Origin: Paramoeba atlantica
Lineage: Eukaryota; Protista; Discosea
Direction: 5' to 3'
Length of the DNA stretch: 64,000 nt
NCBI GenBank assembly: GCA_977017575.1
Contig: CDRNVI010000047.1
Coordinates: forward strand, 248,001-312,000
The notes beneath the pieces were generated by a model. It did not search any database, was not told where the DNA came from, and saw nothing but the letters and a program-made list of their open reading frames with translations. A program made the position numbers and the translations under genes. Each line of letters opens with the position of its first letter. Positions within the stretch are counted from its first letter, which is position 1. This document shows, in pieces, positions 16,475 through 61,948 of the stretch.

Positions 16475-16502
16475 ATAAAGATACAGTTTCTGTACCTTGT
16501 TG
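16475..16502 (+). ncRNA. spliced-leader exon copy (28 nt) at the 5' end of the LINE
   Basis: ATAAAGATACAGTTTCTGTACCTTGTTG aligns to positions 12-39 of trypanosomatid SL exons; followed directly by a 39-nt 5' UTR and the ATG. Confidence 0.85.
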
Positions 16503-19500
16503 AATTATTTTCAATTTTGTACTAACTTTATCTTCCGGAGCATGGCCTCCAATGTCACCTCACCGGCTCCCATCGCGCACGACGGCCTCCCTCGAGGACC
16601 TGTCAGCGCGCAGCGACATCCCCAGAGCTTTCACTTCATCCAAAGTCGAGCGATGCCCGTCAAAATCCGCCCCTCGGACAGCGTCACATGGTCATATTTC
16701 CCAGACACGCATGCCGCAGCCATTGCCCTCACAGAACGAGAGTTCTTCTCGAGTGTCCACACGGCTGAAGCCTCGATCGGCAAAACCTTGAAGTCGGAAA
16801 GCAAAAGAAGTGATGGTCTGATAATCAAATCGTGTACAATTCAAGATGTCATTGAAAACAACGCATGTGAACACCTAAAATACCAAGAAACGGGAAACCC
16901 AAGTCGCACGTTTTGTCACGCCAGCTGGAGTTCCGCCTACAGGGATTCGTTCATGCAGCTTAACGCAGTGTACTCCTCTTCGAACGCGCTCGGCAAAGCG
17001 GTCACGAAGAAATTATGTGGTAGTGACATCCCAGGATTACGAAAATTCCAAATCACACACGTAACTCGAAAAACACAACCCATTGAACTACTACGGGGTC
17101 ACCCAGAGATCACCTACGACGCACCCTATAGGATCCGAGATGACTCTTACAAGGTGTCACCGCCATCATATGCCTCAAAACACGCTCTCGAACCACGTGC
17201 CTCATGCGCTTATAAATGCCGGGACAAAACATCGTGTCTCCACGCATGTTGCAAAGTACGACACGAAGGATCTCTTCCGCCTAACGTGTCTCTTCCCTCT
17301 CCCGAGGACGTTGCCCCTATGGAACCCTCACTTACTTCTCACAGAAGACCGTGCAAACACACATGCCGCGACAAAAGAAATTGTCTGCACAAGTGTTGCA
17401 AAGTGGGGGTCCCCATTACAATGCCCAAAGTAGTCCTCAACCAGTGCTACCCCTCGTGGAACCACCCATAGCTCGAGCAAGTAGTCCACTACCAGCAGAC
17501 TTATCCATAGACACCGATCAGCATACCACACCAGACATCGGACACTTCGAAGAGGTCAGGGATCCGGAGCTCCCGACCGTAAATCCGCCCTCACTAGGAT
17601 GCATGGATGACGCCACACACCACACACAAACATCAACCAATGAAGTCAATTATCGCCCCTGTCGGCACATATGTAGCAACAAAGCTCAGTGCAAGCATCG
17701 ATGTTGCAAAAATGGTGTCATACAACCTAGCACGGAGGTTGTACTCCGCGAACCCGTCCGTACCTCTCCAGACCTGCACACCAGCAATGACAACAACACC
17801 CCTGCCCCAACAGCCCCTCGTCGCAACTGCGCTCATAAATGTAAGGACAAGGCAACATGTAAACATCAATGCTGCCAGAAAGGAGTTCTCCTCAAAGTCG
17901 CTGAAGTAGCGTACTCTGCCATATGCTGGACCACGAGAAATATACTGTGCCCTGCAATGGGTGATGCGGAACGCGCCGCAAAAGCTTCACTACCGCCCCC
18001 TCCACGCGCAACAACCTACCCCCCAGTTCACACAAACCCCTCGAATCGCTCGAGTCCAATACTGAGCCCTGTGCGGAATGCACCACTTGTCCACGCCCCG
18101 CAACATGATTCCCCTTCTGTACGCCGCTCCTCACCTTCTTTACCCCTTGTGCAGTCCGCAACAGATCCCACGCCTCTGCCCTTACCTTTACCTCCCCCAC
18201 CAGAAGGAAACTGCGAACACACGATATTGCAGCGCATCCCTCGTGTCCGGTAAGTCCCGGCTACCCGACCTCTCCCTGAACTGCAGAACCTACTCGAAAC
18301 ATTCCGCACAATGAATGGAGGTCGCGTTTTAGTCCGTTTCACAGAGGAACAGTGGGAGAGTATTATTGCGAAGATCGAGGAACGCTGCAACTCGTATATC
18401 CACCTGGCGCGAAACAAAGAGGACGCCCTGTCGCAAGCTGAAATACTCTCAGCAATCCTCGCTGTAACTGCATTCGAGGCCGCACGGGAAAACGATCCGA
18501 CGCACGGCTTTCTTATACGGACCAGAACTGGCAGAGCCCGAAGAAACTCACGACCCTTAGCCATTGAACGCACAGTGAAAGTACTCAGTCAACACGTTCG
18601 ACAACTTAAACGTGCGCTAACGTTCATGAAGGGTCCTGCGAGAAACAAGCAACGAGGGAAAATAAAGGAAGCCGAAAAGGCACTAAAGCAGTAAATGGAA
18701 GAATCCAGTATGCAGAGGAAAGAAATCGATCGACGGTGGGCTCTTACGCGATTCCAGCGAAATCCCTGGACAGCCGCGGGCGAATGCTTAGATCGCGTCG
18801 ACCCATCTACCTCAGAAACTGAGACGTCCTACCCTACAGTTCCTGTACAGGAGGTTGAAAGATTCTTTGTGGGCTCAATGTCTAGACCAGAAGAGATACA
18901 CAAGATTCCTCCCGCAGAATTTACGAAACCAATTCCCCTTGATGAGATGCAATGGTCAGATATTGACTCAGACATGATCGCAGCAGCCGTCGCATCCAAA
19001 CGCTCTGGGGCTGCCCCAGGCTCGGACACTGTATCGAACGCGCTGCTAAAGCGCTGCGCCCCTGTCTTTACTCACATGGCACAGGTGTTTAATGATGTCC
19101 TAAAATTTGGTGTATGCCCTCCAACCTGGAAAACTGCGGTCACTCGACTTATCCACAAAGGGGGCCCCACCTCAAGTATGGAAAACTGGCGGCCGATAAG
19201 CTTGACTAGCTGCATTGGGAAGCTTTTCCACTCAATCCTCAGTCACCGTATCCTTCAGCATTCCCTGGATTCCAATGCCCTGGACACAACAATACAAAAA
19301 GGCTTCTTGCCGCATATGAATGGGACAGTTGAGCACACCCAGGTCCTTTGCGAGCTCCTCGAGCACCAGCGGCGCCACAAAAGGCAATACGTGCTTGCCT
19401 AGTTTGATATCAAAAACGCGTTTGGATCTATACCCCATACAATTTTATTTCAGGCCTTAAAATGGGCGCGCGTCTCACCGATCCTCATTAACTACATCAA

Positions 19501-21321
19501 AGCGCTGTACGAACGAGCGTCTATACAAATTAAATGTGCAGAAGGACTCACGAAGTCTATTGAGATAGGTCGTGGTGTATTGCAGGGAGATACGCTTTCA
19601 CCTATTTTATTCGACTTGGCGATGGAGCTAGTTCTGCGTTTTGTCCGTTCAAGTTGCCCCGAATACGGGATCACGTGGAATGCGAAAGAAATTTTTCTAA
19701 AAGCCTTCGCAGATGACCTCACTATTCTGACAAATACCCCCCAGGAAATGCAGAATGCTACAAACGCACTCGTCAAAGTTCTAAGCGATATTGGGATGAA
19801 ACTAAACGTGAAAAAATGCCGGCTGCAACACATGGCGATGACGCAAGACTCTGGATATATGACACGCCGACCACAGATCATGATCGGCACGTCACCTATC
19901 CCACACATATGTGATAATGGTAGCACATTTTTAGGCATGACGCTCGCACCCGGTGCTCAACAAGGCAAGACACTCTTTCTAAAACTACGAACCCGTCTGC
20001 GAGCCTGGTTGCGTAATATATCTTCCAGCGCACATGACCTTCCCGCGCGCCTGTGGATATACAATAACGGCATCATCTCTCGTCTGCGGTATTCCTTCGT
20101 CGTGAACTCATGCCTTACCTTCAATCACGTACTTCGTCTACAGCGATGCGCCACACGCGAAATTCGGAAATGGTTAAACGTAGCGAAATCAGCAACTAGT
20201 GAGCTGCTCTATTCAGAGCATGGCTGGAATCTCATGAGTCTGTCAAAACTTTGGCTTCTTTCCACTGTGGGGACAATGGAACAAATGGATAAATCGCGTG
20301 ATCCCGAGGTCCAGCACGCTTTACGTGAGCGCATCAGGCGAGAAGCGAACAAAAGGAGAGCAGGATACATTCGCCCGCCGACGGATATGCACAGTACAAG
20401 CCATAGTAACGTCCGAAGACTCCTTGGAAGCGAATACGAGCGACACCTCACGGAAGCCGTCCAACGGCGTACTGCCGTAGCAGGACGATGGTTCAGAATC
20501 GCAACGGAAGCAGACCTTGCGAGAGTCTTCGCCGCCGCCCTATGCAACCTCAAGAGTGAATCGCTTTCGCGGTTCACATCCTCAGTGCTTACCGAGACGC
20601 CGCTCCCAACCAGGGCATCTCTTCGTAGGTGGGGCGTATCGACATGCGAGCGATAAATGTCCCATATGTGACACTGAGACACAAACTACGCGGCATATTC
20701 TATCTGGTTGTAGGAAGTCACTCGAACAAGGGAGGTATACCCTACGGCATAACATGGTACTACAGGCATTAGCGAACTCCGTACAACGATTCTCCTCCAC
20801 TAGTCAATGTCACTTCGATCTCCCCCACTTCCGCTCCACCCCCGCGTGGCTCACGAACCTTGATACTGAGCTACGTCCTGACGGATGGGTGAAACTATCT
20901 AACGGAGAAGAATACATTATAGAACTTACCTGCCCTTGGGAGGAGAATTTTGAGTTCGCACACGAGCGCAAAATAGAAAAGTACACGAGTTTATATCACT
21001 CTAGAAAACTCGACCATCCTACCACATTCCTACTCGTCTTCGAGGTGGGAGCGAGAGGCAAACTGCATATGTCGGCCCGAACGCTCAACTCTCTCTACAT
21101 GGGAAATGAAGAAGCGGTTGCAGTGTGTCGCCGAAATATGACGAGTAGCGCTCTCCGGGGAAGTTTCATAATTTTCCAGCACCGCGAGAACAAACAGTGG
21201 ATGGAGGTTAGTTCTGGGGAGTGAGTCGCTGACTGTCAGGTGATTTCAACGCGTTTTGTGCGCGTAATATGGAACTCCCATATTCACCGTCTGATCTCTG
21301 TAGAATATTTTCTACATGATA

Positions 21322-21348
<27 letters not shown>
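16475..21348 (+). mobile_element. full-length, decayed RLE-type non-LTR retrotransposon (HERO/NeSL-like) with a 5' SL exon and an (AT)n tail
   Basis: Reconstructed ORF 16542-21224: RT motifs NWRPISL, QKGF, DIKNAFGSIPH, LQGDTLSP, AFADD, LNVKKC; CCHC CPIC..HILSGC; RHN; endonuclease LRPD..IELTCPWE..ERKIEKY. In-frame stops at 18251, 18692 and 19400; frameshifts near 17440 and 20645. Confidence 0.93.
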
Positions 21349-21352
<4 letters not shown>

Positions 21353-21414: not shown

Positions 21415-21993
21415 ATAAAGATACAGTTTCTGTACCTTGTTGGTACTTTTTCCTTAGTTCATCCTTTCTTTCCCCGGCAACGGGCATACTCTTACTGTAT
21501 TTTCATGCCCGTTGCCGGCCGGCACTAAGGTCGGAACTGTCCCTCTTGTCGCTGAAGCAGGGGACGCGCTTTCACCACTTCACCCCTCCCCGACTCACTC
21601 CCCTGGAGTGAGTGTGCTTCCCCCTCTCGGCTTTTTTTCGACTTGTCTTTTTCCTCTCCGAGAGGGCCATGCGTCACGGTGGCCTCCCTTGAGGACCACT
21701 AGACGTGTCCTCCGCCGACGAGACTCGGCTCTCTGCACCTGGCGGTCGCCCAGCTCACCGCACCTCGGCTCTGTCGCAGCTCTCTGCACCCGGATTGCCC
21801 TCGAAACTGTAATATGGGGATTACGCATCCGGCTCTCTGCACCTGCACATGACAACCGAGCTCTCTGCACCTGGGACGCCAGCTCTCCGCACCCGCACAC
21901 CTCCGGCGAGGACGAAACCTCACATGGTCCACCCGTCGTATGCGGGATAAGGACATGGTGAGCAAATCTCTGCACTATAAGTGCATGATAAAA
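21415..21993 (+). mobile_element. SL-RNA-headed SINE-like element, type A, copy A1
   Basis: SL exon plus GTAC, a 14-bp hairpin at 21474-21518, internal CTCTCTGCACC repeats, and 3' ATCTC-TGCAC-tataa-GTGCA-TGATAAAA; interrupts an LRR frame. Confidence 0.88.
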
Positions 21994-22318
21994 CACATAC
22001 ATAACAATGTGAAATTGCGGGGCAACCTACAAATTGTAGGGGCACATGTGGACATGATCTACGATGTTTCCGAAACGGAAATTACAGTTAGCAACAGTTG
22101 TGGCGCGCTGGAACAATATATTATGATGTGATTGGTAGGGAAAAAGTAGGGGGGGGGGGAATTCTCGGTATGTTAACCTGTAACCCGTTTAATACATTAG
22201 TCTACCCTGTGTGAGTGGTATAGTCAACACCGTACACATTCTCCTATTTTTTACTCTCACACTTTCTTCACCCGTACTTTACCTAAGCTTTTATCTGTTC
22301 CCCCAACTCCGATATTTC

Positions 22319-28131: not shown

Positions 28132-28700
28132 AAGATACAGTTTCTGTACCTTGTTGGTACATTTTCCTTTAGTTCATCTTTTCTTTCCCCGGCAACGGGC
28201 ATAGTCTTACTGTTTATATGCCCGTTGCCGGCCGGCACTAAGGCCGAAACTGTCCCTCTTTCTCGGCGAAGTAGGGGACGCGCTTCCACCCCATCACCCC
28301 TCCCCGGCTCACTCTTTGATTGAGTATTCTTCCCTCCCCGTATTTCTTACTTTCGCGCCTTTTCCTTCCCGGGGAGCCATGCGCCATGGTGGCCTCCCTT
28401 GAGCACCACTGGGCGTGGCTCTGCCTCGTCTTATCGCGAGGCAGCGGTCGGTTGCAGTGCGCCCCTCCGGCTGCGTAAAGAGGTGGTGAGTTGCCTGGAC
28501 CACCTCTACCGACTGGGACCGAGTCGGTTGCAGTGCACCCCTCCGGCTGCGCAAAGAGAGGGCGAGTTGCCTGGACCCCCTCTACCGACAGAATCCGTGC
28601 TAAACCCCCTTGGTGCGACATCCGTCATTACGGATTGTGCCGATGATATCGGCTGTCGCATCAAGGGCTGTATCTCTGCGCCAACGAGCGCATGAGCATC
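28132..28700 (+). mobile_element. SL-RNA-headed SINE-like element, type B, copy B1
   Basis: AAGATACAGTTTCTGTACCTTGTTG|GTAC, same head hairpins as A1, duplicated ~64-nt internal unit, 3' ATCTC-TGCGC-caacga-GCGCA-TGA. Confidence 0.88.
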
Positions 28701-28770
28701 AAACGTCGTACAATCAATTTACGGGTAGTATTGATCTTTGTCATCTTCCTGCAACCTTACTTTCGTTGAT

Positions 28771-29208
28771 TCAGGGGACGCGCTTCCACCCCTTCATCCC
28801 TTCCCGACTCACTCCCCTGGAGTGAGTGTGCTTCCCTCTCTCGGCTCTCTTTCTCGTGTCTACCTTTCCGAGGAGGTAATGCGTCACGGTGGCCTCCCTT
28901 GAGGACCACTAGGCGTGTCCTCCGCCGACGAGACTCCCGGCTCTCCGCACCTGGGGGTCGCCCAGCTCTCTGCACCTCGGCTCTGTCGCAGCTCTCTGCA
29001 CCCGGATTGCCCCCGAAACTGTAATATGGGGATTACGCATCCGGCTCTCTGCACCTGCACATGACAACCGAGCTCTCTGCACCTGGGACCCCAGCTCTCT
29101 GCACCCGCACACCTCTGGCGAGGGCGAACCCTCACTTGATCCGCCCGTCGTATGCGGGCACGGACTTTGTGAGCATAATCTCTGCACTATAAGTGCATGA
29201 ACGAACAA
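28771..29208 (+). mobile_element. 5'-truncated SINE-like element, type A, copy A2
   Basis: Starts at CAGGGGACGCG inside the head and aligns to 21557-21990; joined flanks give TTG ATA CTG as in the paralogue, so no TSD. Confidence 0.88.
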
Positions 29209-30462: not shown

Positions 30463-31341
30463 TTTAGGCTCTTCGTTAAACGCGGTGGTTGTTTTCAACT
30501 TAGAAGTCACTCATGCTGCGCGCTTCGCGTTGAAAACTACCACCGCGTATAACGAAGAGCCTAAAAAAGAAAAATTGGCTAGGAAAGCTGAAGAAAACGG
30601 AAGGATTTGAGCCAAAAATGGCCGATTTTTAGGTAAAAATGGGGTCATTTTTGGGTATTTTTGCTCTCAGAGCACTAAATTCGACTTTTTCGTGTGGGAA
30701 ATCACTCGTACGCATGTATTCGAGGCTACCAAACGTATTGGGTGGAGGATGCGGCTCCAACCACACCATTCTTTTGACACAAAAAGACCCCTTTGGGTCC
30801 GAAAATTACTTTTTCGCATTTCTTGGTCAAAAACGAGTCATTTTCGGAGGCGTACCACGGCTTCAAGAAGCTACATCTCGCGAAAACAATGGCGTAAAAA
30901 GCTAATATAGGTCCCAAACTAGCAAAATACAATAGGCGAAACAATTTTGGAAAAATACTTTTTTTACCATTTGTTTCGTCAAGTTGAAATTTTTTTCAAA
31001 AAACAAAATCCGAAAAAATCCGAACTTGACGGACCTGTCCTACGCATACGAGGGGGGGTCACCCCCGGGTAGGGGGGTGGAAAATGCGCGCTAAGACCCC
31101 GGCTACCACTTCTGCGCTTTTATTTCGAAAAATAATTTTTTCAAAAAAAATTCGTGCGGTATGCCCCCCCCATGGACCCCCCAAGGGTCCGATTTTTTTT
31201 GATAATGTTTGGACCACCGGAGCCCCTTTTATATTTTTTTCTTCTATTATATTACTGTGTTCCTCTTTATATTTTCACTGTTTTTGTTCACTTTTTTTTC
31301 AATAATCGAGGGTAGAGCGGTAGTTTTACAACCACCGCAAT
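30463..31341 (+). mobile_element. ~880-bp non-coding element with a long terminal hairpin and a related short hairpin at the other end
   Basis: ~35-40-bp stem AGGCTCTTCGTT..CAAC / GTTG..AACGAAGAGCCT; other end GCGGTAGTTTTACAACCACCGC; full copies recur at 54782-55688 and 63117-64000. Confidence 0.8.
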
Positions 31342-38152: not shown

Positions 38153-38472
38153 GCTCTTACATGCATTATCCATGCGTTCCTATCCTTGAAAGTTTTATTA
38201 TTTTCCAATGTTAATAATCCAGAAAAACGTATAAGAACGGCTCCCGGTGTCATCCGCACGGTTGAAATCACAATACTAACTTATTGAAGACTTGCATTCA
38301 AATACTTGCACGACTGTCATTGCCGCGATTTATTCATTATTTTCTTTGATTTCTTTTTTTTATCTTTTGCTCTTGAGTCTTCTTCACTTTCTTTCGAACC
38401 CCACTTACGGACTATAAAATAAATTTTGGCGTACTTTTGATGTCTTTTCGTTCATTTAAGTAATTCTTTTTC

Positions 38473-38880
38473 AGGCTCTTCGTTAAACGCGGTGGTTGTT
38501 TTCAACTTAGAAGTCACTCATGCTGCGCTCTTCGCGTTGAAAACTACCACCGCGTTAAACGCAGAGCCTAAAAAAGAAAAATTGGTCAGGAAAGCTGAAG
38601 AAAACGGAAAGATTATAGCCAAAAATAGCCGATTTTCGGGTAAAAACGGGGTGATTTTCGCGTATTTTTGCTCTCAAAGCACTAAATCTGATGTTTGCGT
38701 GTGGGAAATGACTCGTAGGGATGAAGCAAAGCCTACCGAACGTGTTGGGTGGAGAATGCGACTCCAACCACACCATTCTTTCGACACACAAAGGCCCCTT
38801 GGGGTCCGAAAAATACTTTTTCACCTTCTTTGGTCAAAAATGTGTCATTTTGAGGGGCGCACCACCGCTCGAAGAAAGGA
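38473..38880 (+). mobile_element. partial copy of the long-hairpin element
   Basis: Hairpin at 38473-38575 plus body aligning to 30570-30870. Confidence 0.8.
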
Positions 38881-38934
38881 TACACCTTGTGAAAGGATGT
38901 ACCTTGTGAAAACAACGGCCGAGAAATATTAGTA

Positions 38935-39113: not shown

Positions 39114-39407
39114 TAAGCTTAAAAACTCATAGGCTGGTCCTGTACTAATCTCGTTTTACGAACGCTATCTAGGGTAACAAACGGTGGGAAACGCGCTAGC
39201 TTTTTTTGAGATCTGTTGAATGCCGAAGGAATTGGGTCAAAATCTCTTACGGTGTGCTCTGGAGCCTGGGGGTGGGGGGGAGCAAGCCAAGAGCTGGACT
39301 GTGTATGATTGTGCTGCTTTGTTTCTAAAACAATAAGGCGAGTGAGTCTGATACCGTTTATGTCTTTTCCGTTTTATTTTGATTTTGAGTTTATATTCCT
39401 GCTTCTG

Positions 39408-42400
39408 ATGAAAATAGAAGGACTATTGCAACAGTCGGTGAGGCATTACTACTCTTTGGATCCTTCCATGAGTGTAGAAGCGGCCTTGCAATTCATTTAT
39501 CGAAATGCACAAGCGCGTCTTCGTCAGATGGTGGGGCACACTCTTGCTGCTGAGAAGCAGTCAAGCGACAGTTCTGCGCAGCCCGGGGAAGAGACCCTTC
39601 GGGATGGAAGTCTGACCTTAGAAGCCGAAAAGGCGCTTTCAGAATTTAATGAAGCCGCTTATTTGGGTCAACCTTCGAAACATCAGGAATGTTATAACTA
39701 CATTGAGCCCATTGCCAAGCATCACGCAATGTACGAAATTTTCGAAGGAGATTTACTAAATTGGTACATCGCTTTGGGAATCAATGCCTTGCTATCCGGA
39801 TTCTCAAGGCGACAACTTGAAGCGACGGCAAGAGGCATTGGGTTACCGACGAAACACATTCAGCCTGCAGCACGATGGACGTTGACATGCTTTATTTCCC
39901 GTTTATCTTTGGACGGGACGTTTTGTAATCTTGTTTCTATTGCTCACCGACCTGAGACTTCACATCCCACGAGTGAGCTTGCACAACCAACGGAGCCTTC
40001 GGAATTATCCGTAGAGGCGCCGGTTTCAAGCGATCTAGCCTTTAATGCACAACCTTTAGCACAGTCACTCGTCATGGACTCAGATCCATCCAATTTAAAA
40101 GCATCAACTGCTACCCAAGAATCTGCACTGCCAACTGAATCAACACCCCCACCCTCCAAAACCGCACTTCTTACAAATCTCGCTCCTTCTACGTCTTTTT
40201 CATTAGCCTCTTCTGCCAATCTTTCGGCCACTGGAAAAGACAGCTCCTTTGAGACACCCCCGGCACGACCCTCTCCTACCTCACAATTGCGCTCTTCTCC
40301 GTTAAGTTTGTTTCCCGAAACCCATCCCTCCCCGAATGATGCAACTCCTACCAGCATCAACCCCCCTTCCAGCCGCAAAAGAACATTTCTTGCCAAAGTA
40401 GACAACACTTTTGGATTGTCCTCGACCAAAAAAAACAGGATAACAAAATCCCCCACATCATCCGAAACCCCAGAAAAGGGACAAGAAACCAAAACAACCC
40501 CTACCCGCCCGTCGAAAGCTCGCAACTCTCGCACCCTCAAAGACACCAACCCCAAACCTCCCCGTCCAAGCCATAAAAAACAAAAAACAACTTCACTCCA
40601 ACCCAACACCACATTCTCTACCCCTTCACCAACGCAACCTAACAACAACAACAACAACAGCCCCTTCGTCTCCCTATCCACCATAACAACCCTTATCCCC
40701 TCCGAGACTCCCCGTCCCCTCTCTACACCCCCCATGGCCGCTACCCCTACACCCCCTATGGCCACTGCGGCCTCTACCCCCACAAGTCCTATCGCCACTA
40801 CCCCCACAAATACCATCGCCACTGCGGCCTCTACCCCCACAAGTACTATGGCCGCTCCCCCCACCCCCGATGAGCTCATCGCCCTCTGCACGGACCCCAG
40901 CCGCTCCGTCCCCGTCCACTGGGTCACCTCCGCCGACCCCCCCGTCCCCGCCGCCACGGCCCACGCCATGCTCACCGCCCCCGCCCGCGTCCCCCACGCT
41001 ACCCTGGTGGCGCACCGGCCCCCGATCGGGCCCGACACCTCGGCGTGGCAGCTGCTGCAGTGGTACCGGGTGGGGGAGCTGGAGGGGTACGCGCGGGGGA
41101 GGGGGGTGGGGTGCGGGGGGGCGGGGAAGCGGCGGGGGAGGCTGGTGGGGGCCCTGCTGAGGTACTGGGGGAAGGGCGGGGGGAGGGGGAGGGGGGGGAG
41201 GGAACGGGGGGGGAAGGGGGAGGTGGTGGGTGGGGAAGAGGGGGAGGTGGTGGGTGGGGAAGAGGGGAGGGGAAAGGAGGAGGGGGGGGAAGGGGAAGGG
41301 GAGAAGGGTTGTGTAGGGGAAGAGAGGGAGGTGGTGGGTGGGGAAGAGGGGGTGGTGGTGGGTGGGGAAGAGGGGGTGGTGGTGGGTGGGGAAGAGGGGG
41401 TGGTGGTGGGTGGGGAAGAGGGGGTGGTGGTGGGTGGGGAAGAGGGGGTGGTGGTGGGTGGGGAAAAGGGGAGGGGAAAGGAGGAGGGGGGGGAAGGGGA
41501 AGGGGAGAAGGGTTGTGTAGGGGAAGAAAGGGAGGTGGTGGGTGGGGAAGAGGGGAGGGGAAAGGAGGAGGGGGAAGGGGAAGGGGAGAAGGGTTCTGTG
41601 GGGGAAGAGAGGGAGGTGGTGGGTGGGGAAGAGGGGGTGGTGGGTGGGGAAGAGGGGGAGGTGGTGGGTGGGGAAGAGGGGAGGGGAAAGGAGGAGGGGG
41701 GGGAAGGGGAAGGGGAGAAGGGTTGTGTAGGGGAAGAGAGGGAGGTGGTGGGTGGGGAAGAGGGGGTGGTGGGTGGGGAAGAGGGGGTGGTGGTGGGTGG
41801 GGAAGAGGGGGTGGTGGTGGGTGGGGAAGAGGGGGTGGTGGTGGGTGGGGAAAAGGGGAGGGGAAAGGAGGAGGGGGGGGAAGGGGAAGGGGAGAAGGGT
41901 TGTGTAGGGGAAGAAAGGGAGGTGGTGGGTGGGGAAGAGGGGAGGGGAAAGGAGGAGGGGGAAGGGGAAGGGGAGAAGGGTTCTGTGGGGGAAGAGAGGG
42001 AGGTGGTGGGTGGGGAAGAGGGAAAGGAGAAGGGGGGAGGGGAGAAGGGTTCTGTAGGGGAAGAGAGGGAGATGGTGGGTGGGGAAGAGGGAAAGGAGAA
42101 GGGGGAAGGGGAAGGGGAGAAGAGTTCTTCTCGGGGAGATGAGGGGGGTGGGGAGGAAGTGGAAAAGGGGGAGAACGAGGGGGGGAAGTCTTCTCGGGAA
42201 GAAGGAGAACTCGAGAGGGAGGAGGAAGAAGAAAAGGGGGGGAAAGAGGTTGTAGTGATTTCGCAGGATGTGTCGCAAGATTCGGCGTTGCGAGAGGTAT
42301 CGCAAGGCGGTATTTTTTCGGAAAATGGTGGGGAGAAGGAGCGAGGCGGGGAGAAGGAGCGAGGCGGGGAGAATGGTACAGAGGCGGGTGCAGGGGTGGT

Positions 42401-42434
42401 GGAGATGGATCACATTTTGGGTGATCCGGCTTAG
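39408..42434 (+). CDS. hypothetical protein with P/T/S-rich middle, possible SAP-like motif and G/E/V-rich tandem-repeat tail
   Basis: ~1000-aa ORF; globular N-terminus; [32 protein letters not shown]; EGVVVGGE and [13 protein letters not shown] repeats. Confidence 0.7.
41190..42130 (+). repeat. G/A-rich hierarchical minisatellite (GGTGGTGGGTGGGGAAGAGGG units)
   Basis: 21-nt units nested in larger ~400-nt duplicated blocks. Confidence 0.9.
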
Positions 42435-42809: not shown

Positions 42810-43960
42810 GTCGAAGTTCCAGTCCTACCATCGATTATCTTTCGTCTTCGCAATCTACAGGAGTCCACCTGAGCACGACATGCTGAGGGTGGTATGTCCG
42901 CCCTTTCCATCTTGACCCTCTCCCACAACTCTCGGACACCTCTTGGGGGATCATAGTGTGCTGCAAGGCGCCGCTTGAGTCTCAATGGGATTAAAGTCAG
43001 GGGATTGCGGGGGCCACCGCACAACTTCAATCCTGGTACCCCGAAGGTACCGTTGCGCACAACGGATTGCTCTTGGGGTCGTTATCTTGTTGGGAGACAG
43101 CCTTGGAGGATTTAGACCGATACTTTCGATAGAGGGGAAAAGATTCTCAAGAATCTTCAGGTTCCCTTGAACCAGAGTTGTTTTTTTCATGCACTTATAA
43201 TGCAGAGATTTGCCTCACTACATGTCCTTACCCCGCATACGACGGGTGGATCACGCGAGGGTTCGCCTTCGCCTGTGGCAAGTGGGTGCAGAGAGCTGGC
43301 GTCCCAGGTGCAGAGAGCTCGGTTGTCATGTGCAGGTGCAGAGAGCCGGATGCGTAATCCCCATATTACAGTTTCGGGGGCAATCCGGGTGCAGAGAGCT
43401 GCGACAGAGTCGAGGTGTGGAGAGCTGGGTGACCGCCAGGTGCGGAGAGCCGGAAGTCGTAGCGAAGGACACGTCTAGTGGTCCTTAAGGGAGGCCACCG
43501 TGACGCATTACCTCCTCGGAAAGGTAGACACGAGAAAGAAAAGCCGAGAGAGGGAAGCACACTCACTCCAGGAGAGTGAGTCGGGGAGGGGTGAAGGGTG
43601 AAAGGCGCGTCCCCTGCTTCAACGAAAAGAGGGACAGTCCTGACCTTAGTGCCGGCCGGCAACGGGCATATAATTACAGTAAGACTATGCCTGTTGCCGT
43701 GGAAAGAAAGGATGAACAACAAGGTACAGAAACTGTATCTTTATACACATACCCCACACCGCTTCAGGACATACGTCCAAATCATGATGTCCTCCCCTCC
43801 ATATTTCACCGTAGGGATCACCCCTTTTCCACCTAGTTCCTCCCCAGGAATCCCTCATGCACAAAGACCTCCCCGTTTGAAAGCGCGAGATATTGGTCTC
43901 GTCCGACCACACAACTGGGGCCCAGTACTCATGGGCTGTAGCAAAGTACTATTTTTTACA
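42810..43960 (-). pseudogene. Tc1/mariner (DDE) transposase remnant interrupted by SINE A3
   Basis: Minus-strand motifs VVWSDET, PTVKYGG..IMIW, QQDNDPK, WPPQSPDFNPIE, ELWERV; several frameshifts. Confidence 0.85.
43178..43744 (-). mobile_element. SL-headed SINE-like element, type A, copy A3 (spliced form)
   Basis: Reverse-strand SL exon at 43717-43744 joined directly to TTCATCC; the 15-nt GT..AG segment of A1 is absent; same 3' hairpin plus A-rich tail. Confidence 0.88.
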
Positions 43961-44183
43961 AAGATCTACAAAATGCAACAAAAATGAGCAAAAACGGATA
44001 AAATAAGAGAATCAAAATTTCCCAGGGGGGCGCACTTCTGAGAAGGGGTGTATTTCCGTTTCGTGTTTCTGGGGACTATACTATTCGCAAAGAAACCATA
44101 CTTTGAATGTGAATAATAACCTTGAGGGTGGTATACACAGTCACAAACCTATTCTCAACCACCCACATTTTCACACCCCCACC

Positions 44184-45005
44184 ATGTACCCCCTATCCCT
44201 CGCGGACTCTGCCCGACCCGCACGGGTCCGGGGGGCTCAGCTTCCCCCTGAATACGACCTCGACCGGTTCCTTGGCGATATCTCTCCTCGTCATCCCTCC
44301 TGGACCCTCTCCCGTCCCGTGGACCAGTGGTCCGGGGTGTACCTGGACAAGGAACGCCACCACGTGTGTCGTATCCGGTGGGATGACCGCAAGCTACGTG
44401 GTCGCCCCTTGTGGACCCACCTCCCTCCCACCCTCACCTCCCTAACCCTTGGCACCGCCCAAGGGGGGAATGCCCTGGACGGGGCTGTGGGGTTCGCCTC
44501 CCTTCCCCGCTCCCTGTGTGAGCTGCAACTCACCCATAACCGGTTCAGTGGGCCGTTGGCAACCCGGAACCTCCCGCATGAGTTGCGGGTGCTCGCTGCG
44601 GTGGACAATGTCCTCGAGGGGACACTAGAGTTGGCTGAGCTCCCTGTGGGGATAAGGGAGGTGTTGTTGTCCCGGAACCGGTTCCACGGAGCCGTGAATC
44701 TCTCCGCTCTCCCGTTTAAGATTCGTATGTTGACACTGTCGCATAATGCGTTCACAGGGTCGGTGGGGTTCTCGGCGTTGCCGCAGTCTATGGAACAGCT
44801 TACGCTGTCGCATAACCAGTTAAGTGGGGAGGTGGAGATTCGAAATCTCCCAGCAGGGTTTATGCGACTGCTTGCTTCCCACAATCAGTTTAGTGGAGTA
44901 GCTGTGCTGGAGAAGATTCCTTCCGGTGTGATTCGGGTGGATTTGTCGTGGAATAAGGGTCTACGCGCGCCGAAGGAGTTCGTGCCCTCTTGTGTGGAAT
45001 TTTGA
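44184..45005 (+). CDS. LRR protein (member 12)
   Basis: RVRGAQLPPEYDLDRF..PSW..WSGV plus LRRs. Confidence 0.9.
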   Translation: MYPLSLADSARPARVRGAQLPPEYDLDRFLGDISPRHPSWTLSRPVDQWSGVYLDKERHHVCRIRWDDRKLRGRPLWTHLPPTLTSLTLGTAQGGNALDGAVGFASLPRSLCELQLTHNRFSGPLATRNLPHELRVLAAVDNVLEGTLELAELPVGIREVLLSRNRFHGAVNLSALPFKIRMLTLSHNAFTGSVGFSALPQSMEQLTLSHNQLSGEVEIRNLPAGFMRLLASHNQFSGVAVLEKIPSGVIRVDLSWNKGLRAPKEFVPSCVEF

Positions 45006-45194
45006 AGCGTTGCAGTTTGTATTTGTTTAATGGGGTAAAGGTGATCATTTCAAGGTGAAGGAAAAACCCTGAAGTAAAATTAGCGCTTTGGAAATACATA
45101 TTGTATCCGCCGACAATCCGCACTTTTTTATACTAAACGTTACAAGTACGATATTACTTTTTCGTTTCATTCATCAGAACTTTGCTTCATATGT

Positions 45195-46555
45195 ATGCTC
45201 TGTCACACCTCTGACATTTCGACACAGCCTAGACTGCCGTCTAAGGTGCGAGGTGCAGAATTGCCTCAAGAATACGATCTCGCACGATTCATTGAGCATA
45301 CTCAAAATACAGATCCCTCATGGACCACATCAACAATTGCGTGTAATTGGCGTGATGTAGAATGTGATGACGGCATGCACGTTACTGACCTTAACTGGAA
45401 ACGTCCTGGGGAAATTGCGGGAACGCTGCAATGGAATTGTCTACCCCACACATTACTCAGGTGTTACATATGGTACAGCCGTTTGACAGGAAGGGTGGAG
45501 CTTGAGGCACTGCCACGCCAGCTTGTTGTCATGCATAAAGATACAGTTTCTGTACCTTGTTGGTACATTTTGCTAGCCCTTCCTTTCTTTTCCCGGAAAC
45601 GGGCATACATTTTCCTTTTAAATGCCCGTTTCCGGCTGACGGCTAGCGGAAACTGTCCCTCTTTGTCGTGGAAGTAGGGGACGTACTTCCGACTTTTCAC
45701 CCCTCCCCGGCTCACTCCTTGAGTGAGTTTTCTTCCCTCCCCGGCTTTCTTCTTCTCGCGCCTGTCTCTTCCCGGGAGCTATGCGCCATGGTGGCCTCCC
45801 TTGAGGACCACTGGGCGTGACTCTGCCTTGCATTATCGCGAGGCAGCGGTCGGTTGCAGTGCGCCCCTCCGGCTGCGTAAAGAGATGGTGAGTTGCCTGG
45901 ACCACCTCTACCGACTGGGACCGAGTCGGTTGCAGTACGCCCCTCCGGCTGCGTAAAGAGAGGGCGAGTTGCCTGGACCCCCTCTACCGACAGAGTCCGT
46001 GTCGAACCCCCTTTGGCGACATCCGTTGTGGGCGGATTATGTGCCGATGATATCGGCCGTCGCAGTAAGGGGATTATCTCTGCGCCAAAGAGCGCATGAT
46101 AAACAAAAATTTGGCATAACTCATTTGTTGGAAACATAGATTTAGCACTTTTGCCTAGCTACTTGGAAACAATGTTTCTGACCAACAACATGTGTACGGG
46201 AAGCATAGACATGACGCACCTTCCTGCTAAGTTATTATACCTTGATCTATCTTACAACGCATTTTCAGGAACTGTGGATCTAGCAAGCTTGCCCCGCGGC
46301 TTGTGTTCTCTCAATTTGGCTCAAAACGACCTTACAGGGACTATAAATCTCCAGCAGTTTCCTTCAACAATGACAAGCTGTCAATTCCAACTTAATTCTT
46401 TCAGTGGTCTTGTAAAGTTTGACAAACTTCCACAAAGCTTGTTGTTATTGCGCTTAAATGGCAATTCGGAGCTATACGGTGAACTAAAGAACTCTGATCT
46501 TCCTCAAGCAATGGCCGAATTCGATTATTGTGGGACAAACATTTGTTTAAAGTAA
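45195..46555 (+). pseudogene. LRR gene (member 13) split by SINE B2
   Basis: KVRGAELPQEYDL..LPRQLVVM to 45534, then IWHNSFVGNIDLALLP..TAA from ~46107. Confidence 0.9.
45535..46106 (+). mobile_element. SL-RNA-headed SINE-like element, type B, copy B2
   Basis: Full 28-nt SL exon plus GTAC; body aligns to B1; 3' ATCTC-TGCGC-caaaga-GCGCA-TGATAAACAAAA. Confidence 0.88.
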
Positions 46556-47182
46556 AGCATTACAGTGCCGGATTCTATTACGGAACACCTTAATTACGGA
46601 ACCAACATTACTCTACGGAACCTACATACTCTCCATTATCTCATACTTCTTTAAAAAAATCCTTTCCTCTGCGGTCTTGCGTATCTCACGCTTCAAGTTG
46701 AAAAAAGTATCTGGCAAATTGGGGTTTGCAAATCGCTTCCGAAGAGGGGGGTCTCGAGTGGTTCTAAAGGTGCGTTTTTCTCTCCTAAAACTACATTGTA
46801 TCTATTTATGGTGCTGTCTTTGGTTCTTTGCGAAAAAACCTTTTCCGGAAAATTTTTTGTCGGGCCAAATTTCATTAATATGGGGTAGCGAGGGAGTAGT
46901 ATCTCCCTCAATAAACAGCGCCCATTTATACAGTGCCCATTTCTTCTTTTCGTTTTAATTCGTCGATAGCCGGCTTTCGACGAGGATGATAGTCCCACTT
47001 CTCGCGCATGATTCCGATGGCGTCCCAGGAGCTGATATTTACGGACCTCCACACAATAAATAGCTTTGACCCACTATTCAATCTGAATATACTCCTGTTA
47101 AACACGTTTACGATACGTGTCTTTTTAATCTTTTTCGCACTCTTTTTTTCCTCTTGTATTTTTATTGTATCACATCCGAAAC

Positions 47183-48445
47183 ATGAGTTCCCCCGTCCCT
47201 GTTCTCTCCGAAGACGAGTTAGCACGCCGTCTAATCGAACCCAGTCACTACAAAGCCTATCTTCGCACTCTCCCCCCTTCCGTACGAAACGCAACCTACG
47301 CCCTCCAAGCGCTCCAAGAGCAGTGCGATGTCCAATTCCGTGCTCGAGATCGTGAAATCGATGCCCTTGAAAAAGAATTCGATTCCTTATGTGCGTCTCT
47401 TCTTACCCATCGCGCGGCCTTAATCTCTGGAGAACTCACCCCTACCGATGCAGAAGTGGACAAAGGATTTCCTGAAGAACACAAGGGGCTTATTGAAATG
47501 CAATCTGAAACGGACCCCTCCTCTTCTTCCTTAAAATCAAAAACGGATCCTGCACCTCCCCCCAGTGCCCTTCCCGGGTTCTGGCTTCAAGCCATGAAAG
47601 GGGAGAGCGCCGTAGCCGAGACCATCACCGAAAGAGATGAAAACATTCTAAAGCATCTCTCCCATGTGGAGTGCAAACGCAACCCGGAGGCGCCACGATC
47701 GGGATTTACGCTTTTCTTTCACTTTTCATCCGAGGCTCGTAAATATTTTACCCAGCCGGTGCTCTCTAAATCGTTTGTCACGAACTACGAAGCCGAGGAA
47801 TGTATTTTTCTGGGCTCCCAGGGTTGTGAGATCTCCTGGGTCTCCGAGAGCGTGAATGTCACGCTCGAGGCGGTGCGAAAGAAGCAGCGAAGTAAGAAGA
47901 CTAGCGCGACGCGGTACGTCACCACGTATGAGCCCTGCGAGAGTTTCTTTGCGCTTTTCGAGGTCAACCACCCGGTGGATCCGAATTTAACGCCTGAGGG
48001 TAAAATGCCGAAAATAAGGGAAGAAAAGGAAAAGGAGGGGAGCGGCACGGAGAGCTCGGAAGGGGGCTCTGAAAGTAGTGGACCGGATATGATTACATTA
48101 GCCCTGTTACGTGAGCGCGATTTTGAGTTGGGTCGGTCCTTTCAGAGCGACCTGTTTTTTCGTGCCGTGGAGTACTACACGCGAGAGGTGGAATCCGACT
48201 CCGAGGATGAGGAGGATTATGATTTCGACGAGGAGGATTTCGATTTAAGCGATGATGACGAGGAATCGTCCGAGGAGGACAGTGGGAAAGATTCAACCTC
48301 AGAGGACGACTCAGAAGGAAGCACGGGGAGTGATATGGACTCCGATGGGGCGAATGAAATGTCCGTGCCGGGCATCCGGGAAGGTTCAAAGAGTGGAAAA
48401 GGGAAGGGGTCTAATAAAGCTAATGAGGACTGTAAGACACAGTAA
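47183..48445 (+). CDS. nucleosome assembly protein (NAP1 family)
   Basis: LPGFWLQAMK, ITERDENILKHL, GCEISW, PCESFF, acidic C-terminal tail. Confidence 0.92.
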   Translation: MSSPVPVLSEDELARRLIEPSHYKAYLRTLPPSVRNATYALQALQEQCDVQFRARDREIDALEKEFDSLCASLLTHRAALISGELTPTDAEVDKGFPEEHKGLIEMQSETDPSSSSLKSKTDPAPPPSALPGFWLQAMKGESAVAETITERDENILKHLSHVECKRNPEAPRSGFTLFFHFSSEARKYFTQPVLSKSFVTNYEAEECIFLGSQGCEISWVSESVNVTLEAVRKKQRSKKTSATRYVTTYEPCESFFALFEVNHPVDPNLTPEGKMPKIREEKEKEGSGTESSEGGSESSGPDMITLALLRERDFELGRSFQSDLFFRAVEYYTREVESDSEDEEDYDFDEEDFDLSDDDEESSEEDSGKDSTSEDDSEGSTGSDMDSDGANEMSVPGIREGSKSGKGKGSNKANEDCKTQ

Positions 48446-48845
48446 CGTAGGGACTTTGATTCCAAGCTTTCTATTCTAACCTGTGCTCTCCTCTGACTAG
48501 TTTTATCCCATCAGCGTCTTCGGTCCCCTAACGATCGATATTATCTTGTTAGGAGGTTGGTAAAACTTTTTAATACAAAATTTTAACGCCATGAATGGAG
48601 CTTGTTTTTCTGTACTATTTTGCAGGGGAATAAAAGAGTTTTTTCAGTATCGCTTTTGAGGAAAATTGAGATTTTTTATTACCTACTTTTGTATACCTTC
48701 GTAATATAGCTATACCTTAGTAGTTGGGGGATATGGTAAACTGAACTGACTTAAATAGGGACATACACGTAGTATAACCCGTTATCATAGTAGAATCTAT
48801 TAGTTAGCAGTGACAGTAGCTTCTAAATTTATAACAACCTGTGTT

Positions 48846-49472
48846 ATGGTCTCAGATCGTGTGACCGGTTCAAGACATCTCTCTTATCATCCCGAAGCAT
48901 TCGAGTTCTCTGACATAGCGGATGAAAGCCGGAAAACGGGAAAAGTAAGAGGTGCACTATTTCCTGTAGAGTACGAGCTTGAGCGTTTGGTAAGTAACAT
49001 AGTGAATCCGCTTCCTTCATGGAACGCCTCCGTACCTGCACACCAGTGGGAAGGGGTCGATTGTTCTGGCGAAGGGAAAATCTTGGGGTTTGTGGTGAAA
49101 TGCAAAAGATTGATGGGTTCATTTCAATGGAGTGCACTGCCTAGATCTCTACTTAAATTCTCAGTGCACAACAACAAGCTTAGCGGGGGATTAGACCTCG
49201 TAAGCCTTCCACCGCGATTGGGTTCCCTGAACGCGTCGTATAATCAATTTATGGGTAGTATTGACCTTTGTCATCTTCCTGCAACCTTATTTTCGTTGAT
49301 ACTGTCAATGAATAAATTGTGTGGTGATGTAACGCTTGTCAATCTGCCTTCTCGAATGCGAAACCTTTCGCTTCGTAAAAACGCCGAGCTTACGGGTACA
49401 GTGCACGCACGCTTACTATCAAAAATGAGGTACAAGTCGTTTGTTGGTACAAAAATTTTAGTGCTGAACTGA
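48846..49472 (+). CDS. LRR protein (member 14)
   Basis: KVRGALFPVEYELERLVSNIVNPLPSW plus LRRs; intact counterpart of 27739-29383. Confidence 0.9.
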   Translation: MVSDRVTGSRHLSYHPEAFEFSDIADESRKTGKVRGALFPVEYELERLVSNIVNPLPSWNASVPAHQWEGVDCSGEGKILGFVVKCKRLMGSFQWSALPRSLLKFSVHNNKLSGGLDLVSLPPRLGSLNASYNQFMGSIDLCHLPATLFSLILSMNKLCGDVTLVNLPSRMRNLSLRKNAELTGTVHARLLSKMRYKSFVGTKILVLN

Positions 49473-49750
49473 TCACCAACGTAGCCCACACGTTGTGTAC
49501 ATACTAGGGCTCACTGCGTGTCTTTTCTCCTGTCTTTGGGTTAATTCTGTTCCCATTTTAATCATACGTTTTTTAGAGTGATTTCTGGATTACATTTTAA
49601 TCGGACTCGTTTCTTTTCGAGAACCGTAACATACATTTCATCTTAACTTTGAAAACAAATTAACGTTTATTTGCTCTTGATGGCATCCTTAGCTTATTGT
49701 ATGATACTCAAAAGTAAATATCTTACTACTCTGTTCGCAGCAATTGTTTT

Positions 49751-54781: not shown

Positions 54782-55688
54782 ATTGCGGTGGTTGTAAAAC
54801 TACCGCTCTACACTCGATTATTGAAAAAAAAGTGAACAAAAACAGTGAAAATATAAAGGGGAACACAGTAATATAATAGAAGAAAAAAATATAAAAGGGG
54901 GCTCCGGTGGTCCAAAACTGAAAAAAAAATTTGAAAAAAATGGGGGGTCCATGGGGGGGGTCCAGGGGGGGGGTCCAGGGGGGGGGGTATGGTCGAGCAA
55001 ATTTTTTCGAAAAAATTAGTTTTCGAAAAAAAACCGCAGAAAGGGTAGCCGGGGTCTTGGCGCGCATTTTCCACCCCCCTACCCGGGGGTGACCCCCCCG
55101 CGTATCCGCAGGACGGGTCCGCCAAGTTCGGATTTTTTCGGAAAAAAAATTTTGAAAAAAATTTCAACTTGGCGAAAAAAATGACAAAAAAAATATTTTT
55201 CCAAAATCGTTTCCCCTATTGTATTTTGATAGTTTGGGACCTACACTAGCTTTCTACGCAGTTGTTTTCGCAAGGTATCACTTCTTCGAACTGTGGTGCG
55301 CCCCCCAAAATGACCCATTTTTGACTAAAAAAGGTGAAAAAGTATTTTTCGGACCTAAAGGGGCATTTTTGTGTCGAAAGAATGGTATGGTTGGAGTCGC
55401 ATTCTCTACCCAATACGTTCGGTAGGCTTCCATTCATGCCTGCGAGTGATTTCCCACGCGCAAATGTCGGATTTAGTGTTCTGAGAGCAAAAATATGCGA
55501 AAATGACCCCATTTGTACCCGAAATTCGGCTATTTTTGGCTATAATCTTTCCGTTTTCCAGGCTAAATTTTCTTTTTTAGGCTCTTCGTTAAACGCGGCG
55601 GTAGTTTTCAACGCGAAGCGCGCAGCATGAGTGACTTCTAAGTTGAAAGCAACCACCGCGTTTAACGAAGAGCCTAAAAAAGAAAATT
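54782..55688 (-). mobile_element. full copy of the long-hairpin element
   Basis: Reverse complement of 30463-31341; hairpin at 55566-55688. Confidence 0.82.
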
Positions 55689-61833: not shown

Positions 61834-61843
61834 ACAAATGTTG

Positions 61844-61948
61844 TTTAGGCGCTTCGTTAAACGCGGTGGATGTTTTCAACTTAGAGGTCACCACTGCTGC
61901 GCGCTTCGCGTTGAAAACTACCGCCGCGTTTAGCGAAGGGACTAAAAA
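61844..61948. repeat. solo long hairpin of the hairpin-element family
   Basis: TTTAGGCGCTTCGTTAAACGCGG..CCGCGTTTAGCGAAGGGACTAAA. Confidence 0.8.

What the first reader, a model, noticed from the sequence alone, without database searches (positions are those of the whole stretch)
43710..43744. Copy A3 has precisely lost a 15-nt GT..AG segment behind the SL exon
Seen: A1 reads exon|GTACTTTTTCCTTAG|TTCATCC (21443-21457), B1 has a 16-nt equivalent (28157-28172) and B2 a 14-nt one (45563-45576). A3 reads exon|TTCATCC. The LINE also has the exon fused directly to its 5' UTR. Known: kinetoplastid trans-splicing joins the SL exon to an AG after a pyrimidine tract. Inference: the element carries its own splice acceptor, so its RNA is cut out of the polycistron and capped by trans-splicing, and A3 is a retrocopy of that product. 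Cis-splicing of a 15-nt intron is a less likely alternative. Either way it supports an RNA intermediate.
Basis: partly seen in the sequence, partly recalled or inferred. Interest (0 to 1): 0.8.

Follow-up and report, generated by a model that had tools for sequence, protein, structure and literature searches.

The report
SINE copy missing its spliced-leader-adjacent segment
One old copy of a short mobile element in this kinetoplastid-type genome joins the host's spliced-leader exon directly to the element body, exactly where eight sister copies keep a 14-17-base GT...AG piece, and it is most simply read as a DNA copy of a trans-spliced RNA, though it is a single example with no RNA proof.

Summary
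Five elements in the window carry the same spliced-leader (SL) exon 3' part. A1, B1 and B2 follow it with GTAC..Y-tract..AG (15, 16 and 14 nt). A3 (minus strand, junction 43717|43716) joins the exon directly to TTCATCC. The LINE reads exon|AATTATTTTC.

New here:
- The exon boundary is real. This organism's own SL RNA gene (a DNA contig) and an abundant SL-bearing RNA contig both end the exon at ..CCTTGTTG.
- The true intron continues GTATGAGAAG, so the segment shares only GTA with it.
- In about 210 kb more of the same genome I found five further SINE heads. All keep the segment (15-17 nt, or 14 in the B2 type), so A3 is 1 of 9.
- The 3' half of the segment, including the AG, lies in a helix with compensatory changes between subfamilies.
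- B2 has an empty allele, so the family was recently mobile.

Verdict: A3 is best read as a retrocopy of a SINE RNA trans-spliced at that AG (about 0.55). No junction reads could be obtained. Unchecked first-stage notes on other pieces of this genome also list SL-headed retroelements.

The parts
43177..43745 (-). SINE copy A3. 5' end is (T)ATAAAG.., 3' end is ATCTCTGCATTATAAGTGCATGA plus the tail AAAAAACAAC. It lacks the 15-nt segment.
   Evidence: Alignments (89-90% identical to the other A copies). Tail signature. A paralogous empty site joins 43176 to 43746. Sequence read.
43717..43744 (-). SL exon 3' part (the last 28 nt of the exon) at the head of A3. The exon|body junction lies between 43717 and 43716.
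   Evidence: The exon end is confirmed by the SL RNA gene and SL-mRNA contigs and by L001.
21415..21997 (+). SINE copy A1, full length, with the SL part at 21415-21442.
   Evidence: 98% identical to the A copy in L014.
21443..21457 (+). 15-nt segment GTACTTTTTCCTTAG in A1. This is the piece missing from A3.
   Evidence: The same 15 nt are present in the A copy at L014 3130-3144. CCTTAGT pairs with ACTAAGG downstream.
28132..28703 (+). SINE copy B1 with a 16-nt segment at 28157-28172. It sits in an LRR gene.
   Evidence: Comparison with the intact paralogue at 49160-49480.
28771..29208 (+). SINE copy A2, 5'-truncated so it has no head. It sits one LRR repeat downstream of B1 at the same relative site (..TTTCGTTGAT|).
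45537..46109 (+). SINE copy B2 with a 14-nt segment at 45563-45576. The insertion is polymorphic.
   Evidence: A contig at single-copy depth (22) joins 45536 to 46110 with one C between them.
16475..21349 (+). R2-like LINE with a broken reading frame. SL part at 16475-16502 is fused directly to the 5' UTR AATTATTTTC... The 3' end, ATCTCT-stem-loop-ATGA, is at 21294-21319, followed by a (TA)n tail.
   Evidence: A 63%-identical homologue, P0003, matches R2 proteins at E = 4e-26.

Best explanation
A3 is a retrocopy of a SINE-A transcript that had been trans-spliced. A parent copy of the A1 kind (SL part, then GTAC, a short pyrimidine tract and AG, then the body) was transcribed as part of a longer RNA. 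The trans-splicing machinery used the AG that ends the 15-nt segment and joined a genuine SL exon to TTCATCC. That RNA was then reverse-transcribed and inserted by the partner R2-like LINE, which recognises the shared 3' stem-loop. The new copy starts 28 nt before the exon end, as all copies of this LINE/SINE group do. Shown: the exact exon boundary, the AG and pyrimidine tract in sister copies, the retroposon nature and recent mobility of the family, and the presence in this genome of DNA copies of nearly whole SLs fused to element 5' UTRs. Inferred: that the loss happened in RNA, that the donor was the genuine SL RNA, and that the event is occasional rather than the family's normal route.
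For: (1) The exon ends at ..CCTTGTTG. A DNA contig runs through the SL part plus GTA and continues TGAGAAGCTTCGAAC, which is the organism's own SL RNA gene. An RNA-run contig of depth 1448 has the SL joined to CCTTCTTTTTCTCC. L001 shows the same exon followed by GTATGAGAAGCTTCG in a tandem unit with 5S rRNA. (2) The A3 gap is exactly exon|...AG|. Of about 555 possible starts for a 15-nt deletion in the element, only 2 equivalent ones give this product. There is just 1 nt of microhomology, so slippage is not favoured. (3) All 8 other heads keep GTAC..Y-tract..TAG and none has an imprecise deletion there. (4) The SINEs share ATCTCT-stem-loop-ATGA with the LINE, have short templated A-rich tails, and B2 has an empty allele. 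(5) Other elements in the same genome carry SL nt 3-38 fused directly to their 5' UTRs (L008), so RNAs bearing the whole SL do get copied into DNA here.
Against: Only 1 of 9 heads shows the loss. A3 is an old, decaying copy: it is 89-90% identical to the other A copies, has two mismatches in its long hairpin, and has several small indels, so a DNA deletion in place is possible. A3 starts at the same SL position as the unspliced copies rather than at SL nt 1, so nothing in it proves that a fresh SL was added. The pyrimidine tract is only 10 nt and the AG lies in a conserved helix. No RNA evidence exists: the one RNA-like run has no SINE coverage, and the DNA contigs break at the SL part, so no genome-wide count was obtained.
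Confidence: 0.55

Rival explanations
1. Plain DNA deletion. After insertion, A3 lost 15 bp by a replication or repair error that happens to run from the exon end to the AG.
For: A3 is old (89-90% identity to the other A copies) and has other small indels and broken hairpin pairs. It is the only such copy among 9 heads.
Against: The end points coincide to the base with the verified exon boundary and with an AG behind a pyrimidine tract. Only 2 of about 555 placements give this product. There is no direct repeat to drive slippage (1 nt shared). A3's other indels are 1-3 nt.
Confidence: 0.17
2. Splicing that uses the element's own relic 5' splice site. The SINE's exon|GUAC acts as donor, either in cis (a 15-nt intron) or in trans onto another SINE RNA, and the product is retrocopied.
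For: The segment starts with GTA, as the true SL intron does. This reading directly explains why A3 starts at the same SL position as its sisters.
Against: From general knowledge of spliceosomes, 15 nt leaves no room for a branch point, and kinetoplastids have very few cis-introns. The SINE lacks the true SL RNA intron beyond GTA (compare), so it lacks whatever intron elements the donor needs.
Confidence: 0.1
3. The segment-free state is original, or is an artefact. Either A3 descends from an independent SL capture that never had the segment, or the junction is an assembly error.
For: The LINE families have the exon fused directly. No listed contig bridges 43716/43717.
Against: Both A copies with intact heads and all six B copies have the segment, so it predates the A/B split. 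An assembly error that removes exactly exon-to-AG is very unlikely.
Confidence: 0.05

Closest known systems
Relic spliced leaders and recycling of processed cDNAs in dinoflagellates (recalled from memory for the original report; Symbiodinium retrogenes in PMC5585692, abstract seen, not read in full)
   Same: A DNA copy carries the host SL joined exactly at a trans-splice acceptor, which records reverse transcription of a trans-spliced RNA.
   Different: Here the template is a SINE mobilised by an R2-like LINE in a kinetoplastid-type genome, not a host mRNA. The parent already carried an SL part. The SL in the copy starts 28 nt before the exon end, not at its first base. There are no tandem relic SLs.
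CRE-clade site-specific LINEs (SLACS, CZAR, CRE1/2), which insert between nt 11 and 12 of the 39-nt SL exon (PMC5814959; PMC12278014)
   Same: They are retrotransposons tied to the SL of kinetoplastids. The 5' end of the elements here (28 nt before the exon end) is the same relative position as the 11/12 site. The RT is of the restriction-like-endonuclease (R2-like) kind.
   Different: Here the copies lie in LRR genes and other repeats, not in SL RNA genes. They carry the downstream SL part as their own 5' end. They have no TSD. They end in a stem-loop plus a short templated tail rather than poly(A). They also have SINE partners.
R2 and its non-autonomous derivatives, and L1Tc/NARTc, whose 5' ends are set by an HDV-like ribozyme (L1Tc: PMC3185411 and PMC3383444, abstracts seen, not read; the R2 part is recalled from memory)
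   Same: A LINE and short derivatives share their 5' and 3' terminal modules, and a constant 5' end lies inside host-derived sequence.
   Different: No ribozyme match was found in the SINE or LINE heads. The 5' module here is host SL sequence.
SIRE/VIPER of Trypanosoma cruzi, repeats that supply trans-splice acceptors to neighbouring genes (recalled from memory)
   Same: A repeat carries a pyrimidine tract and AG that the trans-splicing machinery can use.
   Different: In those cases the acceptor serves host mRNAs. As far as I know, no retrocopy of the spliced product has been described.

Membership tests
Retrocopy of a trans-spliced RNA | The host SL exon is joined, exactly at its 3' end, to the downstream sequence | tested here: met
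   A3 junction at 43717|43716. The exon end is verified by the SL RNA gene contig, the SL-mRNA contig and L001.
Retrocopy of a trans-spliced RNA | The junction falls at an AG behind a pyrimidine tract in unspliced relatives | tested here: met
   A1 and the L014 copy read CTTTTTCCTTAG|TT. The six B heads have equivalent tracts.
Retrocopy of a trans-spliced RNA | The SL is present from its first bases | tested here: not met
   A3 starts at ATAAAG, 28 nt before the exon end, like the unspliced copies. Other elements (L008) do carry SL nt 3-38.
Retrocopy of a trans-spliced RNA | The spliced RNA exists (junction reads) | tested here: inconclusive
   The one RNA-like run (17 million letters) has SL-mRNA contigs but no SINE coverage.
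SINE mobilised by a partner LINE | Short, non-coding, and sharing its 3' end with an autonomous LINE | tested here: met
   ATCTCT-stem-loop-ATGA occurs in 9 SINE copies and in the LINE at 21294-21319, with different stems. The elements are 570-580 nt.
SINE mobilised by a partner LINE | Evidence of recent insertion | tested here: met
   Empty allele for B2 at single-copy depth. Copy pairs 98% identical (A1 and L014; B2 and L008).
CRE clade (SLACS/CZAR/CRE) | Inserted in SL RNA genes at the 11/12 site | tested here: not met
   All copies seen lie in LRR genes or other repeats. Only the position of the 5' end matches that site.
CRE clade (SLACS/CZAR/CRE) | RT with a restriction-like endonuclease | tested here: inconclusive
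   The homologue P0003 aligns to R2 proteins over the RT and linker (E = 4e-26) and has a zf-RVT match. The endonuclease motif itself was not examined, and the window copy is frameshifted.
CRE clade (SLACS/CZAR/CRE) | Target-site duplication and poly(A) tail | tested here: not met
   The A2 and B2 sites show no duplication (B2 loses 1 nt). The tails are 8-10 nt and specific to each subfamily.
Cis-spliced spliceosomal intron | GT..AG ends and a length that allows a branch point | tested here: not met
   The ends are GT and AG, but the piece is 15 nt. Whether that length rules out a branch point was not tested; I judge it too short from general knowledge.
HDV-like ribozyme 5' module | Match to a ribozyme covariance model | tested here: not met
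   Rfam scans at E up to 10 over 21380-22020 and 16440-16760 gave only chance matches.

The most novel reading that the evidence does not exclude
This genome holds an R2-like LINE and its SINEs that carry the last 28 nt of the host spliced leader, from the very position that SLACS/CZAR/CRE target, as a structured 5' module. A3 would then be a genomic fossil showing that trans-spliced element RNA is retrotransposed. The same process may be how the families with the SL fused directly to the 5' UTR arose. That would be a kinetoplastid counterpart of dinoflagellate cDNA recycling, acting on mobile elements.
Probability: 0.4. Interest if true: 0.75.

Novelty: new variant of a known kind. Interest (0 to 1): 0.5.

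Why it matters
Kinetoplastids have almost no gene-specific promoters, and every mRNA needs the spliced leader. How their retrotransposons obtain a capped, translatable or transposable RNA is only partly understood. The known answers are an internal promoter plus ribozyme in L1Tc, and the SL gene promoter in SLACS. A copy that records trans-splicing of an element RNA, inside a family whose members all begin with SL sequence, would show a third route. It would also give a simple handle for study, namely precise exon|body junctions, for measuring how often spliced RNAs are recycled into DNA. As it stands the case rests on one old copy, so its weight is modest. The surrounding SL-headed LINE/SINE system is the more striking object.

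Tried and rejected
- Reads: I laid four runs on 43150-49100. The Logan contigs break at the shared SL part. No listed contig bridges the A3 junction and no 14/15-nt indel rows were shown, so I got no count of spliced against unspliced copies. The RNA-like run has no SINE coverage.
- Public collections: the exact SL 3' part occurs once in the metagenome contigs (L001, a genuine SL RNA gene, which was useful). In genome contigs it gave only two chance bacterial hits, and in viral contigs none.
- Protein route to more copies: three homology searches, one search of the representative library and all 12 contig look-ups gave about 210 kb of the same genome but only five more SINE heads. The last look-up, aimed at fetching the A3 locus from the ENA assembly, found no record.
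- Rfam: nothing at gathering thresholds in the window, and only chance matches at E up to 10 in the heads.
- Literature: no held paper contains this SL variant. The SLACS paper PMC330328 is not held.
- Idea that the segment is the start of the SL intron: rejected, because only GTA is shared.
- Slippage between CCTTGTTG and CCTTAGTT: rejected, because it would give a different product from the one seen in A3.
- Idea that the segment is a relic of the SL's last 16 nt, left by re-splicing at the SL's internal AG: rejected, with 7 of 16 matches in my own by-eye comparison.
- RNAalifold on four heads prefers a hairpin within the SL itself, so the long-range pairing of the SL part with downstream sequence stays uncertain.

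Full report
**Observation**

The 23-mer GATACAGTTTCTGTACCTTGTTG occurs five times without mismatch, against 0.01 expected by chance. With the five bases before it, it forms a 28-nt block, ATAAAG...TTG, at the 5' end of four elements; the fifth, B1, starts two or three bases in.
- LINE: 16475-16502.
- A1: 21415-21442.
- B1: from 28132.
- B2: 45535-45562.
- A3: 43717-43744, minus strand.

What follows the block differs by copy.
- A1 has GTACTTTTTCCTTAG (21443-21457), then TTCATCC.
- B1 has a 16-nt version of the segment.
- B2 has a 14-nt version.
- A3 goes straight to TTCATCC.
- The LINE goes straight to AATTATTTTC.

In the alignments the A3 gap is exactly 15 nt. Only a single shared G makes its placement ambiguous.

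**Is the block the real spliced leader, and where does the exon end?**

Both questions can be answered.
- An exact-match scan of metagenome contigs found one locus, L001. It is a 1.8-kb tandem unit with a 5S rRNA gene. Its SL RNA gene reads AACTTTAACGATAAAGATACAGTTTCTGTACCTTGTTG followed by GTATGAGAAGCTTCGAACC....
- The organism's own data say the same. A DNA contig follows the SL part of B2 through GTA (45565) and then continues TGAGAAGCTTCGAAC. That is its own SL RNA gene.
- A contig of the RNA-like run, at depth 1448, carries ..TTTAACGATAAAG..CCTTGTTG joined to CCTTCTTTTTCTCC. That is an SL-bearing mRNA.

So the exon ends at ..CCTTGTTG, exactly where the A3 gap begins. The 15-nt segment shares only GTA with the true intron.

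**What the elements are**

A and B are non-coding elements of 570-580 nt. A and B are about 60% alike overall, and their heads are more alike than that.
- They end in ATCTCT, a stem-loop and ATGA, followed by a short tail specific to each subfamily. The LINE ends the same way, with a different stem, at 21294-21319.
- The window's LINE copy is frameshifted. A 63%-identical homologue aligns to R2 proteins at E = 4e-26.
- Insertions make no target duplication. B1 and A2 sit at the same relative site of two consecutive repeats of one LRR gene. The intact paralogue at 49160-49480 shows this.
- A contig at single-copy depth joins 45536 to 46110, with one C between them. So B2 is absent from one allele, which shows the family moved recently.
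- A paralogous empty site brackets A3 at 43176/43746.

**More copies**

Through homologues of LINE and SINE-tail ORFs I fetched about 210 kb of the same genome (ENA assembly ERZ24900291, loci L004-L014). I scanned it for the SL 3' end.

Five more SINE heads turned up.
- L006, B type: 16-nt segment.
- L007, B type: 16-nt segment.
- L009, B type: 17-nt segment.
- L008, B2 type: 14-nt segment.
- L014, A type: 15-nt segment, identical to A1's.

All keep GTAC, a pyrimidine tract and TAG. The length differences are small indels inside the tract. None shows an imprecise deletion at this spot. A3 is therefore 1 of 9 heads, and 1 of 3 in the A type.

By identity, A1 and the L014 copy are 98% alike. A3 is 89-90% from every other A copy and has two mismatches in its long hairpin. 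It is an old copy.

**The segment is more than an acceptor**

In the A type, CCTTAGT spans the AG and is perfectly complementary to ACTAAGG, which lies just behind the 14-bp hairpin. In the B2 type, the same two positions read GCTAGCC and GGCTAGC. B1 keeps TTAGT and ACTAA. The hairpin itself also has a compensatory C-G to A-T change in B2.

So the 3' half of the segment belongs to a conserved helix of the element RNA. Taken with the 8-to-1 count, this means the usual template for new copies retains the segment.

**Why splicing is still the best reading of A3**

- The gap runs to the base from the verified exon end to an AG behind a 10-nt pyrimidine tract.
- Of about 555 possible placements of a 15-nt deletion, only two equivalent ones give this product.
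- There is no repeat to drive slippage. The nearby similarity of CCTTGTTG and CCTTAGTT would give a different product.
- A3's other indels are 1-3 nt.
- A 15-nt cis-intron leaves no room for a branch point (general knowledge). Trans-splicing has no such limit, because the branch lies upstream in the acceptor RNA.
- RNAs bearing the whole SL are copied into DNA in this genome. Four element heads in L008 carry SL nt 3-38 directly before AATTATTT... and an ORF.

I therefore put about 0.55 on a retrocopy of a trans-spliced SINE RNA. The rivals are a deletion in place (about 0.17), use of the element's own relic 5' splice site (about 0.10), and an original or artefactual state (about 0.05). The remainder is unassigned.

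**What weakens it**

- It is one copy, and an old one.
- Its SL part starts at the same position as in unspliced copies, so nothing in A3 proves that a fresh SL was added.
- There is no RNA evidence.

**Context worth recording**

All heads of this LINE/SINE group start 28 nt before the exon end, usually ..AT|AAAG. That is the same relative position as the 11/12 site of the 39-nt trypanosomatid SL used by SLACS, CZAR and CRE (PMC5814959; PMC12278014). Yet these copies lie outside SL genes, lack duplications and lack poly(A).

The SINEs and one LINE family carry, downstream, a complement of SL positions 14-26. Duplex energies beat all but 7-15 of 500 shuffles for most SINEs and for the L012 LINE, but the window LINE is not significant. 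What sets the constant 5' end is open. It could be homology-guided joining at SL-like targets, masters inside SL genes, or RNA processing. Rfam gives no ribozyme match.

Unchecked first-stage notes on other pieces of this genome list further SL-headed retroelements.

Noticed in passing
window 45537-46109: SINE B2 is absent from one allele. A contig at single-copy depth (22) joins 45536 to 46110 with a single C between them. The insertion is therefore recent, made no target duplication and cost 1 nt of target.
   Followed up: partly
L001 1-1785 (metagenome contig Ga0316204_10168667): A circularly permuted tandem unit holds a genuine SL RNA gene with the same exon 3' part (exon, then GTATGAGAAGCTTCG..., a hairpin and a T-run) and a 5S rRNA gene at 450-568 on the other strand.
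   Followed up: partly
L008 minus strand, SL ends at 17789, 6099, 2440 and 2284: Three heads carry SL nt 3-38 copied into DNA; the fourth (6099) starts further in, at ..AGCGAT. Each is followed by AATTATTT.. and an ORF about 35 nt later. Two are preceded by ..AAAAAACATA(T/C). At 17789 the SL follows the tandem-repeat and A-rich end of another element. The heads at 2440 and 2284 are two SL heads 156 nt apart. The first two SL bases are replaced by AT or AC.
   Followed up: partly
window 21418-21440 with 21531-21548; 16478-16488 with 16523-16535; L012 from 6808: The SINEs and some LINE 5' UTRs carry, downstream, a complement of SL positions 14-26 (GGAACTGTCCCTCTT; AACTTTATCTT; AAACTGCTATCTT). 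Duplex energies beat all but 7-15 of 500 shuffles for SINE copies A1, B1 and B2 and the L012 LINE (36 of 500 for A3). The window LINE is not significant (99 of 500).
   Followed up: partly
window 21455-21461 with 21526-21532; 45572-45578 with 45641-45647: A 7-bp helix spans the AG of the segment and shows compensatory changes between subfamilies (CCTTAGT/ACTAAGG against GCTAGCC/GGCTAGC). In both it lies 14 nt before and 5 nt after the long hairpin.
   Followed up: yes
window 16450-16475, 21395-21416, 28115-28131, 28750-28770, 45515-45536: The LINE and four SINE copies all sit at the same relative spot of LRR repeats (after LP..L.., DNA ..TTTCGTTGAT| or similar). The spot loosely resembles the SL around its own ..CTTTAACGAT|AAAG position. 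Two pairs hit consecutive repeats of one gene.
   Followed up: partly
L009 11400-11450: A B-type SINE head directly abuts the 3' tail of a LINE of the window's family (..CCTACATGATAACATAT|ATAAAG..).
   Followed up: no
L014 3114-3129; L007 1605-1620; L005 1404-1419: Three heads start inside the SL part at about ..TTTCTGTACC, just after the SL's internal ACAG. This could be a preferred truncation point or a second kind of junction.
   Followed up: no
window 16503-16512, 28157-28166; L005 from 1420; L013 minus strand from 14275; L012 from 6808: After the exon, several families read four or five variable bases (AATT, GTAC, TCTT or TCTTT) and then ATTTTC. The L012 LINE, AATACTTTTG, fits only loosely. 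The SINE segment may be homologous to the start of the LINE 5' UTR.
   Followed up: no
window 30463-31341, 38457-38883, 54782-55684, 61831-61948, 62591-62719, 63118-64000: Another repeat family (copies 83-97% alike, in both orientations) with G-rich and A-rich runs. The ENA contig that holds the first part of the window ends near window position 38,880, inside one of these copies.
   Followed up: no
window 41016-42191: An array of 12/24-nt units lies inside a 1041-aa ORF (39309-42434).
   Followed up: no
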